DNA of 64,000 nt from Macrostomum lignano. Lineage: Eukaryota. Of the stretch, positions 3,301 through 31,908 are shown one piece after another. The stretch covers positions 224,673 to 288,672 of the forward strand of contig NIVC01001444.1 of the NCBI GenBank assembly GCA_002269645.1. The letters are read 5' to 3'. Under the pieces are notes generated by a model. It saw only the letters and a list, made by a program, of their open reading frames with translations. It made no database searches and was not told the origin of the DNA. Within the stretch, counting starts at the first letter, position 1; every line of letters begins with the position of its first letter. A program made the translations under genes and the position numbers.

Positions 3301-6300
3301 TCCTAACTGGGCTGATCCTGATCCTAATGGATCTGATCCCGATCCTAATGGATCTGATCCCGATCCTAATAGATCTGATCCCGATCCTAATGGATCTGAT
3401 CCCGATCCTAACTGGGCTGATCCTGATCCTAATGGATCTGATCCCGATCCTAATGGATCTGATCCCGATCCTAATGGATCTGATCCCGATCCTAATGGAT
3501 CTGATCCCGATTCTAACGGATCTGATCCCAATTCTAATGGATCTGATCCCGATTCTAACTGGGCTGATCCCGATCCTAATGGATCTGATCCCGATCCTAA
3601 CTGGGCTGATCCTGATCCTAATGGATCTGATCCCGATCCTAACTGGGCTGATCCTGATCCTAATGGATCTGATCCCGATCCTAATGGATCTGATCCCGAT
3701 TCTAATAGATCTGATCCCGATCCTAATGGATCTGATCCCGATCCTAACTGGGCTGATCCCGATCCTAATGGATCTGATCCCGATCCTAACTGGGCTGATC
3801 CCGATCCTAATGGATCTGATCCCGATCCTAACTGGGCTGATCCCGATCCTAATGGATCTGATCCCGATCCTAATGGATCTGATCCCGATTCTAATGGATC
3901 TGATCCCGATCCTAACTGGGCTGATCCCGATCCTAATGGATCTGATCCCGATCCTAATAGATCTGATCCCGATCCTAATGGATCTGATCCCGATCCTAAT
4001 GGATCTGATCCCGATCCTAACTGGGCTGATCCCGATCTTAATGGATCTGATCAAGATCCTAATGGATCTGATCCCGATCCTAACTGGGCTGATCCCGATC
4101 CTAATGGATCTGATCCCGATCCTAACTGGGCTGATCCCGATCCTAATGGATCTGATCCCGATCCTAATAGATCTGATCCCGATCCTAATGGATCTGATCC
4201 CGATCCTAATGGATCTGATCCCGATCCTTATGAATATGATCCTGACCCTAATGGATCTGATCCCGATCTTAATGGATCTGATCCCAATCTTAATGGATCT
4301 GATCCCGATCTTAATGGATCTGATCCCGATCTTAATGGATCTGATCCCAATCTTAATGGATCTGATCCCGATCTTAATGGATCTGATCCCAATCTTAATG
4401 GATCTGATCCCAATCTTAATGGATCTGATCCCGATCTTAATGGATCTGATCCTGATCCTAATGGATCTGATCCCGATCCTAATAGATCTGATCCCGATCC
4501 TAACTGGGCTGATCCTGATCCTAATGGATCTGATCCCGATCCTAATGGATCTGATCCCGATCCTAACTGGGCTGATCCTGACCCTAATGGATCTGATCCC
4601 GATCTTAATGGATCTGATCCCAATCTTAATGGATCTGATCCCGATCTCAATGGATCTGATCCCAATCTTAATGGATCTGATCCCAATCTTAATGGATCTG
4701 ATCCCAATCTTAATGGATCTGATCCCAATCTTAATGGATCTGATCCCGATCCTAATGGATCTGATCCCAATCTTAATGGATCTGATCCCGATCCTAATGG
4801 ATCTGATCCCGACCCTAATGGATCTGATCCCGATCCTAATGGATCTGATCCCAATCTTAATGGATCTGATCCCGATCCTAATGGATCTGATCCCGACCCT
4901 AATGGATCTGATCCCGATCCTAACTGGGCTGATCCTGATCCTAATGGATCTGATCCCGACCCTAATGGATCTGATCCCGATCCTAATGGATCTGATCCCA
5001 ATCTTAATGGATCTGATCCCGATCCTAATGGATCTGATCCCGACCCTAATGGATCTGATCCCGATCCTAACTGGGCTGATCCTGATCCTAATGGATCTGA
5101 TCCCGATCCTAATGGATCTGATCCTGACCGGTCGCACTGTTAAACCGCAGGCTGCTGGATTGTGACGGACGGCCTGAGCTCGGGCATCGTGAAGCTGACT
5201 GGAGACGCAGTCAGGGACTACACTGACGCGTACGGCCCCAACCACATGCTGGCCATCGGTGTGGTCAGCGAGGCCCGAGCGGCGGCGAGAAGCAACGGAG
5301 GAGTCGTCGGCTCGGTGAGTTGCTGGGATATATGGAGTTTTAACCTTGTAGAAACTCATTCATCATCATGGCAAGAGTCTGAGACGCATCTGAGATATCG
5401 GAGGGCATATCGAACTGATATACAGAACCATCCTGAATGTACTTTTAACTCAGAAGCCACAGCTAACGGGGGACGAGCTGGACGCGAATCACACGCACTT
5501 CATCCTGGTGTCCGGCCGGCACTCGGACGCCACCTCCTGGTCCGAGGCGGTCGAGGCTGAGGCCGATTTTCGGGCTCGATTCTCCAGAGCGGCAGCCAGC
5601 AGCAGCTGGACGCAGAAGGCCGGGGAGGAGAGCCGGGTGCCGATGTGCGGCCTGCTGATTGGCGGGGACAGGACCGCACTGCGCCAGGTCTACCAGGCCT
5701 TGGTGGCCAACAGGTGCCCCATTGTGGCGCTCAAGGTGACCAATCGTTAATAAATATTTGGAGGAGGGCTGTGGGCCCCATGGCGCAGCGCCTTCGGCGA
5801 CCGCAAACCGAGAACTGAGACGTTTTTGCCCATTCCATACACGCGCTCAAGCAGGGTGTACAGCGGGCTTGATTATTATTAATTGTTAGGCATGTACATC
5901 TCTATGCCATAAACAGACAGCTCAAGCACACATACTCAAAGCCATCAACACAGACAGCTCAAGCACACATACTCAAAGCCATCAACACAGACAGCTCAAG
6001 CACACGTACTCAAAGCCATCAACAGACAGCTCAAGCACACATACTCAAAGCCATCAACACAGACAGCTCAAGCACACATACTCAAAGCCATCAACAGACA
6101 GACAGCTCAAGCTCACATACTCAAAGCCATCAACAGACACCTCAAGCACATACTCAAAGCCATCAACACAGACAGCTCAAGCACACATACTCAAAGCCAT
6201 CAGCAGACAGACAGCTCAAGCACACATACTCAGAGCCATCAGCAGACAGACAGCTCAAGCACACATACTCAAAGCCATCAGCAGACAGACAGCTCAAGCA

Positions 6301-31908: not shown

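What the first reader, a model, noticed from the sequence alone, without database searches (positions are those of the whole stretch)
5454..31908. TRPM2-architecture channel that appears to have lost both ADP-ribose sites but kept the Ca2+ site
Seen in sequence: the NUDT9-H Nudix-box region reads CLPW-FLTDHQPGCDYVKCSVDVARSF, with no GG, no Glu and no REFxEE (NUDT9 has AIPGGMVD.GE...LKREF.EE). Positions matching human TRPM2 NUDT9-H ligand residues are replaced: PNHALVLALTRW (Y1349->V), GYLDDHLNADNAW (R1433->L), ALRSSH (Y1485->R). In MHR1/2, the Y295 equivalent is V (AVEAEADFR; R302 kept) and GSGR358VAD reads GTSGAAD (R358->G). The S2-S3 Ca2+ ligands LEEVKQ and WNKLD are intact. Established: ADPR binding at MHR1/2 (and NUDT9-H in human) gates TRPM2, and cnidarian and choanoflagellate TRPM2 keep an active ADPRase. 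Inference: an invertebrate paralog that keeps the NUDT9-H fold but is ADPR-insensitive or uses another ligand. Human numbering is from memory and the alignments are by eye.
Basis: partly seen in the sequence, partly recalled or inferred. Interest (0 to 1): 0.75.

Follow-up and report, generated by a model that had tools for sequence, protein, structure and literature searches.

The report
Flatworm praziquantel-type TRPM channel paralog
This is an intact gene of the free-living flatworm Macrostomum lignano for an ion channel of the family that the anti-worm drug praziquantel opens; it has a TRPM2 layout, but the residues that bind TRPM2's activator ADP-ribose are replaced in the whole flatworm family, so the family's natural activator is probably something else.

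Summary
All nine quoted peptides are on the + strand where stated. Proper alignments confirm R358->G, R1433->L, Y1485->R, Y1349->V, no aromatic at Y295, R302 kept, no Nudix box, and all five Ca2+ ligands kept.

The window is 100% identical to M. lignano contig NIVC01001444.1. The gene is BOX15_Mlig001812g1, annotated "hypothetical protein". It has 26 GT-AG exons in the window, and its first 128 residues lie upstream.

It is not an isolated oddity. It is one of three M. lignano in-paralogs that are sister (100% bootstrap) to the parasitic-flatworm TRPM_PZQ channels, the praziquantel target. Every flatworm member sampled carries the same substitutions. The NUDT9-H domain is as conserved as the transmembrane core, and its core is confidently modelled with a NUDT9-like fold.

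Two additions:
- An invariant C-x7-H-x3-C-x4-C motif sits where the Nudix box was. It may be a Zn site; this is not tested.
- This paralog alone has FGN instead of FGD in the pore filter.

ADP-ribose insensitivity remains an untested inference. A 2024 review says nothing is known about what this domain binds.

Verdict: a new member of a known kind, of moderate interest.

The parts
192..366 (+). Exon A (first coding exon inside the window; P0001 residues 129-187). MHR1 start. Holds the VHGGELE loop (285-302) in place of TRPM2 VTGGAKNF, with a 2-residue deletion.
   Evidence: AG/GT borders. 100% match to P0001. Family alignment.
736..759 (+). Micro-exon A2 (24 nt, RDKSNSQ). Present in P0001 and P0002, absent from isoform P0003.
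5151..5314 (+). Exon B, MHR1. IVTDGLSSGIVK replaces TRPM2 IITGGSHTGVMK. The M215 equivalent is V (5189-5191).
5454..5735 (+). Exon C, MHR1/2. The Y295 equivalent is V (5550-5552; HMMER places E). The R302 equivalent R is kept (5571-5573).
7105..7232 (+). Exon D. GTSGAAD replaces TRPM2 GSGRVAD. The R358 equivalent is G (7114-7116).
7309..7472 (+). Exon E (MHR2).
8217..8332 (+). Exon F (MHR2/3).
8412..8561 (+). Exon G (MHR3).
9739..9795 (+). Exon G2 (NSKAAIFHQLWEYHHKSHR). I missed it in my first model. It is conserved in paralog P0002.
11324..11474 (+). Exon H (MHR3).
11558..11707 (+). Exon H2, a low-complexity linker exon. It starts and ends in phase 1, so it could be skipped without a frameshift. 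Known only from the public annotation.
   Evidence: No transcript evidence available.
12410..12478 (+). Exon H3, a linker exon (phase 1 to 1), known from annotation only.
13425..13523 (+). Exon H4, a linker exon (phase 1 to 1), known from annotation only.
14722..14831 (+). Exon I (MHR4 start). Uses an AAG acceptor.
20084..20366 (+). Exon J (MHR4).
21012..21213 (+). Exon K (pre-S1).
22250..22352 (+). Exon L, start of S1. The S1 pocket residue N (Sm.TRPM_PZQ N1388 equivalent) is at 22347-22349.
22442..22570 (+). Exon M, S1-S2. Ca2+ ligands in LEEVKQ: E843 equivalent at 22559-22561, Q846 equivalent at 22568-22570.
23308..23821 (+). Exon N, S3-S5 and pore helix.
- Ca2+ ligands in WNKLD: N at 23356-23358, D at 23365-23367.
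- The S4-S5 pocket residue is I (T1518 equivalent) at 23539-23541.
- The pore filter is FGN at 23785-23793. The other PZQ-clade members examined have FGD.
24121..24842 (+). Exon O, S6, TRP helix, rib/pole helices. The TRP-helix E at 24318-24320 corresponds to human E1073 (fifth Ca2+ ligand) and to the Sm.TRPM_PZQ D1677 'gatekeeper'.
27433..27834 (+). Exon P, Ala/Pro-rich linker and start of the NUDT9-H cap (HRLWRFAPFNFERYPG...).
28237..28325 (+). Exon P2 (VDYPEYFAFDVSDEVVVFPTVEACDTDKN), part of the NUDT9-H cap.
29149..29440 (+). Exon Q, NUDT9-H.
- GPNHALV: H1346 equivalent kept (29309-29311); Y1349 equivalent is V (29318-29320).
- Ends in CLPW, which holds the first Cys of the C-H-C-C motif (29429-29431).
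30987..31157 (+). Exon R, the remnant of the Nudix box (FLTDHQPGCDYVKCSVDVARSFVINRL).
- No GG and none of the catalytic Glu residues.
- Holds H (30999-31001), C (31011-31013) and C (31026-31028) of the invariant C-x7-H-x3-C-x4-C motif.
   Evidence: Pfam NUDIX gives no hit even at E<=10.
31586..31699 (+). Exon S. GYLDDHLNADNAW: D1431 equivalent kept (31607-31609); R1433 equivalent is L (31613-31615).
31783..31908 (+). Exon T, the last exon. ALRSSH: Y1485 equivalent is R (31849-31851); H1488 equivalent kept (31858-31860). Stop TGA at 31906-31908. Uses an AAG acceptor.

Best explanation
The locus is an intact, expressed-type gene of Macrostomum lignano (BOX15_Mlig001812g1). It encodes a tetrameric cation channel of the flatworm TRPM_PZQ clade. 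That clade descends from a TRPM2-like ancestor and includes the praziquantel target.

Shown:
- It keeps the TRPM2 domain order and a folded NUDT9-H module.
- In the common ancestor of the sampled flatworm clade, the ADP-ribose determinants of both cytosolic sites were replaced. In the N-terminal MHR1/2 cleft the Tyr clamp and the phosphate Arg are gone. In NUDT9-H the phosphate Arg became Leu and the adenine-stacking Tyr became Arg. The Nudix catalytic box was lost.
- The five-residue Ca2+ site between S2, S3 and the TRP helix is kept. So are the S1/S4/TRP pocket residues that bind praziquantel in the schistosome channel.

Inferred:
- The channel is not gated by ADP-ribose.
- Opening depends on Ca2+ at the conserved transmembrane site, together with a still unknown ligand or lipid in the adjacent S1-S4 pocket, as in TRPM8 and TRPM4/5 rather than TRPM2.
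- The NUDT9-H domain is catalytically dead. It is kept for a structural or regulatory role.
- With N instead of D in its pore filter, this paralog probably passes less Ca2+ than its sisters.
For: Identity of the locus:
- The window is 100% identical over 34.9 kb to M. lignano contig NIVC01001444.1.
- The 26-exon translation equals P0001 residues 129-1789.

Family placement:
- In an NJ tree of 1181 columns with 200 bootstraps, the three M. lignano paralogs are monophyletic (100%) and sister to the parasite clade (100%).
- That parasite clade is TRPM_PZQ. S. rodhaini P0009 reproduces the published S. mansoni residues N1388, Y1392, R1514, T1518, D1602, D1677, Y1678 and R1681 at a constant offset of 641. 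The T/S/I and D/E pattern across taxa matches PMC9910428.

Site changes:
-.
- Roles of the residues: PMC6759353, PMC7555694, and PMC13060097 (R1433A nearly abolishes binding; Y295A disrupts it markedly).

Ca2+ site.

Fold and constraint:
- AF2 core pLDDT is about 80-95 except for two loop blocks, and Foldseek gives NUDT9 as top hit.
- NUDT9-H identity to neodermatan orthologs is 51-52%, against 54-57% for S1-S6 and 24-26% for the linker.

Catalytic loss: Pfam NUDIX gives no hit, against 45 bits for a fly NUDT9.

Functional precedent in the family:
- NUDT9-H truncation and 19 MHR mutants leave praziquantel activation intact (bioRxiv 10.1101/2021.03.09.434291).
- An M. lignano ortholog is activated by (R)-praziquantel with EC50 18 uM (PMC9910428).
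Against: - No functional data exist for this protein, and none that I could find on ADPR for any TRPM_PZQ.
- R302 is kept and the SLOG fold is still recognisable (93 bits), so a remodelled nucleotide site is possible.
- R358A alone leaves partial binding and Y1485A has a modest effect in human TRPM2 (PMC13060097).
- The strong conservation of the altered NUDT9-H pocket (DD[QH]LNAD, LR[ST]SH) could mean it binds a different ligand rather than none.
- Ca2+ dependence of TRPM_PZQ gating was not documented in the papers I could read.
- No transcript evidence was available for the exon model. Exons H2-H4 are the least certain.
Confidence: 0.7

Rival explanations
1. The channel is still gated by ADP-ribose or a close relative (2'-deoxy-ADPR, ADPR-2'-phosphate, another NAD metabolite). 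Gating would go through a remodelled MHR1/2 cleft, with Lys or other residues replacing the Tyr clamp and the kept R302 contacting the ribose.
For: - R302 is conserved in the whole family and the SLOG/MHR1/2 domain is under constraint (52% identity to neodermatan orthologs).
- MHR1/2 is regarded as the orthosteric site across species (PMC6759353).
- R358A alone leaves 7.8 uM ADPR binding in the human domain (PMC13060097).
Against: - The Tyr clamp, R358 and the first Gly-rich loop (2-residue deletion; GG lost in the parasite members) are all altered together.
- The SLOG profile score drops from 278 to 93 bits.
- 19 MHR point mutants at ADPR-site positions did not affect drug activation of Sm.TRPM_PZQ, although that experiment does not test ADPR itself.
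Confidence: 0.15
2. The NUDT9-H domain was repurposed rather than silenced. It would be a Zn-stabilised (Cys-His-Cys-Cys) module whose conserved, re-lined pocket (Leu for the phosphate Arg, Arg for the stacking Tyr) binds a different small molecule or partner protein, or senses redox state or Zn, and so tunes gating. This is compatible with the main explanation and adds to it.
For: - The C-x7-H-x3-C-x4-C motif is present in essentially all flatworm-type sequences that cover the region. The only match outside the group is one presumably unrelated pattern match.
- In the AF2 model the four residues lie on a beta-hairpin (strands 152-154 and 157-161), the following loop, and the first turn of the helix starting at 168. 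That layout is reminiscent of known Zn knuckles.
- The domain is as conserved as the pore domain.
- The replaced pocket residues are themselves invariant (L 29/29, R 27/27).
Against: - No coordinates were available, so the geometry of the four residues could not be measured.
- pLDDT is only 62 for residues 161-170.
- Truncating NUDT9-H did not change praziquantel responses of Sm.TRPM_PZQ.
- Conserved Cys residues can have other roles.
Confidence: 0.3
3. The gene is a decaying duplicate, that is a pseudogene in the making, and the lost sites simply reflect relaxed selection in one of three M. lignano copies.
For: - It has the longest branch of the three paralogs (0.249 vs 0.17-0.19).
- It carries unique changes: pore FGN, V/E at the Y295 position, and M215->V.
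Against: - The reading frame is uninterrupted across 26 exons and all borders are GT-AG.
- The substitutions in question are shared with every ortholog and paralog, so they predate the duplication.
- Identity to sister paralogs is 66-74% in S1-S6 and 57-61% in NUDT9-H.
Confidence: 0.03
4. The apparent loss is a gene-model artefact: a missed exon carries the canonical Nudix box or Arg/Tyr residues.
Against: - The alignment to NUDT9 runs without a gap across the Q/R exon junction.
- The public annotation has the same exons.
- No canonical motif occurs in any frame of the window.
- All orthologs show the same sequence.
Confidence: 0.01

Closest known systems
[quoted passage not shown]
   Same: - Same clade: sister group with 100% bootstrap.
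- Same domain order, including NUDT9-H.
- Same replaced ADPR-site residues and the same C-H-C-C motif.
- Pocket residues N1388, Y1392, R1514, Y1678 and R1681 are conserved, and the 'N-I-E' triad reported for Ml.TRPM_PZQ is present (PMC9910428).
   Different: - The pore filter is FGN instead of FGD. D1602A strongly attenuated Ca2+ signals in Sm.TRPM_PZQ (PMC6901322).
- It is shorter (1789 vs about 2000-2270 aa), because it lacks the long low-complexity inserts in MHR1/2.
- The published Ml.TRPM_PZQ numbering (E1495) fits neither this protein (E1218) nor Mlig004938 (E1297). I could not tell which copy was cloned. Mlig004938 also has N-I-E and has FGD.
TRPM2 (human, zebrafish, Nematostella, choanoflagellate)
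   Same: - Best PDB sequence matches: nvTRPM2 E 5e-139, hTRPM2 E 3e-123.
- MHR1-4, 6TM, TRP helix, rib/pole helices and a C-terminal NUDT9-H.
- An identical five-residue Ca2+ site.
   Different: - Y295 and R358 in MHR1/2, and R1433 and Y1485 in NUDT9-H, are replaced.
- The Nudix box is absent. Invertebrate TRPM2s keep an active one; vertebrate TRPM2s lost catalysis but kept the binding residues.
- Pfam NUDIX is not detectable.
TRPM4 / TRPM5 / TRPM8 (Ca2+-dependent TRPMs without ADPR gating)
   Same: - The S2-S3-TRP Ca2+ site is conserved, as in all Ca2+-sensitive TRPMs (PMC6759353).
- These are the next best PDB hits after TRPM2.
- The family has a TRPM8-like ligand pocket in S1-S4 (bioRxiv 10.1101/2021.03.09.434291).
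   Different: - Those channels have no NUDT9-H domain at all.
- They are vertebrate paralogs, not orthologs of this gene.
NUDT9 (mitochondrial ADP-ribose pyrophosphatase)
   Same: - It is the best sequence and fold match for the C-terminal 230 residues (E 1e-29; Foldseek E 1.7e-12).
- GRTGL, WGPNH, DD.xN.DNAW and SH motifs are recognisable.
   Different: - No GX5EX7REUXEEXGU box.
- The substrate-phosphate Arg is replaced by Leu and the adenine-stacking Tyr by Arg.
- It is fused to a channel.

Membership tests
TRPM channel (melastatin subfamily) | N-terminal SLOG/MHR domains plus the TRPM2-like domain | tested here: met
   Pfam LSDAT_euk 93 bits and TRPM2 domain 190 bits.
TRPM channel (melastatin subfamily) | Six-TM ion-transport domain followed by a TRP helix (WxxQR) | tested here: met
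   Ion_trans 50 bits. YWNYQRYSMIKEY aligns to TRP helices of TRPM2 and TRPM4.
TRPM2 (ADP-ribose-gated) | C-terminal NUDT9-homology domain | tested here: met
   HMMER to NUDT9 E 1e-29. AF2 plus Foldseek top hit is NUDT9. PF25969 NUDT9_N is on record.
TRPM2 (ADP-ribose-gated) | MHR1/2 ADPR contacts: Y295 clamp, R302, R358 | tested here: not met
   Only R302 is kept. Y295 aligns to V/E and R358 to G.
TRPM2 (ADP-ribose-gated) | NUDT9-H ADPR contacts: R1433 (alpha-phosphate), Y1485/D1431 (adenine) | tested here: not met
   R1433 aligns to L and Y1485 to R. D1431 is kept.
TRPM2 (ADP-ribose-gated) | Transmembrane Ca2+ site E843/Q846/N869/D872/E1073 | tested here: met
   All five are conserved.
TRPM2 (ADP-ribose-gated) | Activation by ADPR plus Ca2+ | not testable with these tools
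   Needs electrophysiology. No published test was found for any TRPM_PZQ.
TRPM2 chanzyme / NUDT9 ADPRase | Nudix box GX5EX7REUXEEXGU with catalytic Glu residues | tested here: not met
   It aligns to DHQPGCDYVKCSVDVARSFVINRL. Pfam NUDIX gives no hit at E<=10. No such motif occurs anywhere in the window.
TRPM_PZQ clade (flatworm praziquantel-target channels) | Phylogenetic placement with TRPM_PZQ orthologs | tested here: met
   NJ bootstrap is 100% for (3 M. lignano paralogs + parasite TRPM_PZQ). These are distance trees only; no ML tree was made.
TRPM_PZQ clade (flatworm praziquantel-target channels) | S1-S4/TRP pocket residues (Sm N1388, Y1392, R1514, T1518, D1677, Y1678, R1681) | tested here: met
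   The window has N, Y, R, I, E, Y, R, which is the 'N-I-E' variant published for M. lignano (PMC9910428). Only 7 of the 23 pocket residues could be checked, because the supplementary table is not held.
TRPM_PZQ clade (flatworm praziquantel-target channels) | Acidic pore-filter residue (FGD; Sm D1602) supporting Ca2+ permeation | tested here: not met
   The window has FGN. The other PZQ-clade members examined have FGD, and a representative of the second flatworm group has E at this position.
TRPM_PZQ clade (flatworm praziquantel-target channels) | Activation by praziquantel | not testable with these tools
   Published for one M. lignano ortholog (EC50 18 uM). Which gene copy was used is unresolved.

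The most novel reading that the evidence does not exclude
In flatworms the NUDT9-H enzyme domain of an ancestral TRPM2 was converted into a Zn-bound (Cys-His-Cys-Cys), non-catalytic sensor. Its re-lined pocket would recognise a ligand other than ADP-ribose, and this unknown ligand together with Ca2+ would be the natural regulator of the praziquantel-target channels. Within that family, this M. lignano paralog (pore FGN) would have shifted toward a Ca2+-activated, mainly monovalent channel. That would be a TRPM4/5-like function evolved independently inside a TRPM2 architecture.
Probability: 0.15. Interest if true: 0.75.

Novelty: new member of a known kind. Interest (0 to 1): 0.42.

Why it matters
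TRPM_PZQ is the target of the only drug used at scale against schistosomiasis, yet its natural activator is unknown. A 2024 review states that nothing is known about what its NUDT9-like domain binds or whether it is an enzyme.

The comparison made here gives a clear, testable prediction for the whole family. Canonical ADP-ribose binding and hydrolysis are gone at both sites, the Ca2+ site is intact, and the former Nudix box carries an invariant Cys/His motif.

A free-living, laboratory-tractable flatworm with three paralogs, one of which has a natural pore-filter variant, is a convenient and harmless system in which to test this.

For TRPM evolution, it adds a third outcome for the ancestral channel-enzyme, besides 'active enzyme' (cnidarians, choanoflagellates) and 'dead enzyme that still binds ADPR' (vertebrates).

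Tried and rejected
1. My first 20-exon hand model was incomplete. It missed six annotated exons, including a NUDT9-H cap exon, and was corrected against P0001.
2. A tblastn run was polluted because the protein file held all 35 hits. It was used only to locate the missing exons.
3. The first tree script timed out. A second tree was distorted by the aberrant metagenomic sequence P0119 and was discarded. The final trees are.
4. I tried to identify which M. lignano gene was cloned as Ml.TRPM_PZQ. The supplementary table is not held, no accession is given in the text, and E1495 fits none of the three paralogs. This is unresolved.
5. The word-indexed homolog search with the NUDT9-H domain gave only six hits. 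It was replaced by the exhaustive HMMER search.
6. The Zn-site idea could not be checked geometrically, because the structure tool returns no coordinates.
7. Literature searches for a direct ADPR test on TRPM_PZQ found none. The 2020 Trends Parasitol review is not held.
8. The hidden-exon and pseudogene explanations were considered and rejected.
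Full report
WHAT IS THERE. Reading the open segments and splice sites gave a 20-exon model with an uninterrupted 1494-codon frame ending at TGA 31906-31908. A homolog search returned Macrostomum lignano protein P0001 (BOX15_Mlig001812g1, 'hypothetical protein', 1789 aa). Comparison with it showed six exons I had missed: a 24-nt micro-exon, one MHR3 exon, three low-complexity linker exons and one NUDT9-H cap exon. 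The final 26-exon model, every intron GT-AG, translates to exactly residues 129-1789 of P0001. The window is 100% identical over 34,908 bases to contig NIVC01001444.1 of assembly GCA_002269645.1. The gene starts about 3.3 kb upstream of the window, so the first 128 residues are not in it. All residues under discussion lie inside the window.

CHECK OF THE RESIDUE CLAIMS. I used HMMER alignments to PDB chains that carry native human numbering (6mix/8e6t) and to NUDT9 (1q33).
- R302 aligns to R (kept) and R358 to G (GTSGAAD vs GSGRVAD).
- Y1349 aligns to V, R1433 to L (DDHLNADNAW vs DDPRNTDNAW) and Y1485 to R (LRSSH vs LYANH/LYASH).
- D1431, H1346 and H1488 are kept.
- The Nudix box [23 protein letters not shown] aligns to DHQ--PG(CDY)VKCSVDVARSFVINRL, with no gap at the exon junction. 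Both glycines and all catalytic glutamates are gone.
So is the fifth Ca2+ ligand, E1073, in the TRP helix.

Two refinements are needed. Y295 aligns to E by HMMER and to V in the family-guided alignment. It is non-aromatic either way, and the paralogs and parasite orthologs have K. Y1349 is D in NUDT9 and in Nematostella TRPM2, so that substitution carries little weight. Pfam's NUDIX model does not detect the domain even at E<=10, whereas a fly NUDT9 scores 45 bits and a sea-urchin TRPM2-like channel 23 bits. A six-frame motif scan of the whole window found no alternative exon with a canonical Nudix box, RNTDxAW, GSGR, PGG or LYASH.

WHAT THE RESIDUES MEAN. In human TRPM2 the MHR1/2-bound ADPR is clamped by Y295. 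Its phosphates contact R358 and its ribose contacts R302. In NUDT9-H the adenine stacks between Y1485 and D1431, and the alpha-phosphate contacts R1433. Ca2+ is held by E843, Q846, N869, D872 and E1073 (PMC6759353). Binding measurements on isolated human domains identify Y295 and R1433 as the key determinants. R358A keeps partial binding and Y1485A has a modest effect (PMC13060097).

IT IS A FAMILY TRAIT. The nearest relatives after the M. lignano paralogs are 2000-2300-residue TRPM proteins of tapeworms and flukes. One group of these is TRPM_PZQ, the praziquantel target. The S. rodhaini protein reproduces the published S. mansoni residues N1388, Y1392, R1514, T1518, D1602, D1677, Y1678 and R1681 at a constant offset. 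The taxon pattern also matches Rohr et al. (PMC9910428): T/S/I at the S4-S5 position, and D in flukes and cyclophyllidean tapeworms against E in Sparganum and M. lignano.

Neighbour-joining trees on 1097-1181 well-aligned columns give these results:
- The three M. lignano paralogs (Mlig001812, which is the window; Mlig013780; Mlig004938) are monophyletic (100%).
- They are sister to the parasite TRPM_PZQ clade (100%).
- A second flatworm group and a fourth M. lignano gene (Mlig025325) lie outside.
- The window gene branches first among the three and has the longest branch.

Alignments show that every one of these flatworm proteins has L (V in Mlig025325) for R1433, R for Y1485, V/I for the Y1349/D position, no GG, no REFxEE, G/A for R358, a non-aromatic residue (mostly K) for Y295, and a conserved R302.

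I also ran an exhaustive HMMER search of 1.84 billion representative proteins with the NUDT9-H domain and tabulated the aligned columns. At R1433, L occurs in 29/29 flatworm-type sequences against R in 116/131 others. At Y1485, R occurs in 27/27 flatworm-type sequences, while 89 of the others have Y, F or H. Names recovered for a sample of the flatworm-type hits are all Platyhelminthes. The loss is therefore ancient: it predates the split of Macrostomorpha and Neodermata. It has since been maintained.

THE DOMAIN IS NOT DECAYING. Identity between the window protein and neodermatan TRPM_PZQ is 51-52% in NUDT9-H. That is comparable to S1-S6 (54-57%) and MHR1/2 (52%), against 24-26% in the intervening linker. 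AlphaFold2 on a 15-sequence alignment models the Nudix core (residues 113-293 of the domain) mostly at pLDDT 80-95, while the cap is poorly modelled. Foldseek's best PDB match is NUDT9 (1qvj, E 1.7e-12), followed by choanoflagellate and human TRPM2.

TWO ADDITIONS. First, where the Nudix box used to be, all flatworm-type sequences that cover the region carry an invariant C-x7-H-x3-C-x4-C pattern. In the window it is C1650, H1658, C1662 and C1667, read as CLPWFLTDHQPGCDYVKC. In the model these residues sit on a beta-hairpin, the following loop and the first turn of the helix. That arrangement is reminiscent of Zn knuckles. It is only a hypothesis, because no coordinates were available. Second, the window paralog alone has FGN in the pore filter, where the other PZQ-clade members examined have FGD. 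D1602A strongly attenuated praziquantel-evoked Ca2+ signals in the schistosome channel (PMC6901322).

HOW IT MOST LIKELY WORKS.
Shown:
- A TRPM2-derived architecture, a complete transmembrane Ca2+ site and a conserved S1-S4/TRP pocket.
- A degenerate MHR1/2 nucleotide cleft.
- A folded NUDT9-H that lacks the catalytic box and whose ADPR-contacting residues are replaced.

Published for relatives:
- Praziquantel binds the S1-S4 pocket.
- NUDT9-H truncation and 19 MHR point mutants do not affect that activation (bioRxiv 10.1101/2021.03.09.434291).
- An M. lignano ortholog responds to (R)-praziquantel with EC50 18 uM.

Inferred:
- The channel is not ADPR-gated.
- It uses Ca2+ plus an unknown pocket ligand or lipid, and in that respect works like TRPM8 or TRPM4/5.
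- NUDT9-H is kept as a structural or regulatory module.
- The TRP-helix acidic residue that Rohr et al. call the praziquantel 'gatekeeper' (D1677 in Sm, E1218 here) aligns to human E1073, the fifth Ca2+ ligand. This suggests that drug and Ca2+ act at adjoining sites.

I give the combined statement a confidence of 0.7. Clade membership is near certain. ADPR insensitivity is about 0.7-0.75.

WHAT IS KNOWN AND WHAT IS NEW. TRPM_PZQ, its TRPM2-like layout and its TRPM8-like pocket are well described. This particular gene is only an automatic 'hypothetical protein'. I could not establish whether it or Mlig004938 is the cloned Ml.TRPM_PZQ. Both have the published N-I-E pocket triad, and the published residue number E1495 fits neither. 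In the open literature available here, no paper reports a test of ADPR on TRPM_PZQ or lists these substitutions. [quoted passage not shown] The gene is therefore a new member of a known kind. The family-wide residue analysis and the Cys/His motif are modest but useful additions to an open question.

LIMITS.
- No transcript data were available.
- The trees are distance-based.
- Only 7 of the 23 published pocket residues could be checked.
- The NUDT9-H cap was poorly modelled.
- All functional statements about this protein are inference.

Noticed in passing
window 15793-19743, - strand (inside the intron between exons I and J): An uninterrupted 1317-codon gag-pol-type reading frame. Pfam hits are reverse transcriptase and RNase H in the piece scanned. 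It looks like an LTR-type retrotransposon, possibly still active, and it accounts for the high-GC block at 16-20 kb. LTRs and integrase were not examined.
   Followed up: partly
window 23785-23793: The pore-filter motif is FGN in this paralog. The other TRPM_PZQ-clade members examined have FGD. The Asp is needed for Ca2+ signals in the schistosome channel, so this copy may be less Ca2+-permeable.
   Followed up: partly
window 29429-29431, 30999-31001, 31011-31013, 31026-31028: An invariant C-x7-H-x3-C-x4-C motif replaces the Nudix box in all flatworm-type NUDT9-H domains sampled. It may be a Zn site. The geometry could not be checked.
   Followed up: partly
window 1384-2109, 2640-5162, 5873-7100, 7518-8013, 10596-11024, 14739-15245, 26465-26970, 28320-28840, 32000-33990: The introns and flanks are packed with long minisatellite arrays. 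These give spurious open frames of hundreds of codons in several frames on both strands, for example an array of about 2.5 kb at 2640-5162.
   Followed up: no
window 46058-46873 and 47397-48038, - strand: Two exons of an aldose 1-epimerase (galactose mutarotase) gene (Pfam PF01263, E 5e-45 and 2e-21). The downstream exon's open frame runs into a Pro/Ser-rich repeat.
   Followed up: partly
window 35517-37253 and 39318-40841: A large inverted duplication with arms of about 1.7 kb. The outer parts are 98-99% complementary and decay to 78% toward the centre, with a spacer of 2-5 kb. It is a palindrome or a foldback-type element downstream of the channel gene.
   Followed up: partly
window 11558-11707, 12410-12478, 13425-13523: Three annotated linker exons all start and end in phase 1. 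Any of them could be skipped without a frameshift. They are not conserved in sequence with paralog P0002 and rest on annotation only.
   Followed up: no
P0030 (Hydractinia TRPM, found): This cnidarian TRPM also has a degenerate Nudix box (no GG/REFxEE) but keeps the R1433-equivalent Arg (DDKRNTDNAW). Nudix-box loss therefore occurs repeatedly, and it is separable from loss of the phosphate-binding Arg.
   Followed up: no
P0196 / P0052 (M. lignano BOX15_Mlig025325): This is a fourth, more basal M. lignano NUDT9-H-bearing TRPM. It has V for R1433 and R for Y1485, and it lacks the exact C-H-C-C spacing. It could mark an intermediate state in the remodelling of the domain.
   Followed up: partly
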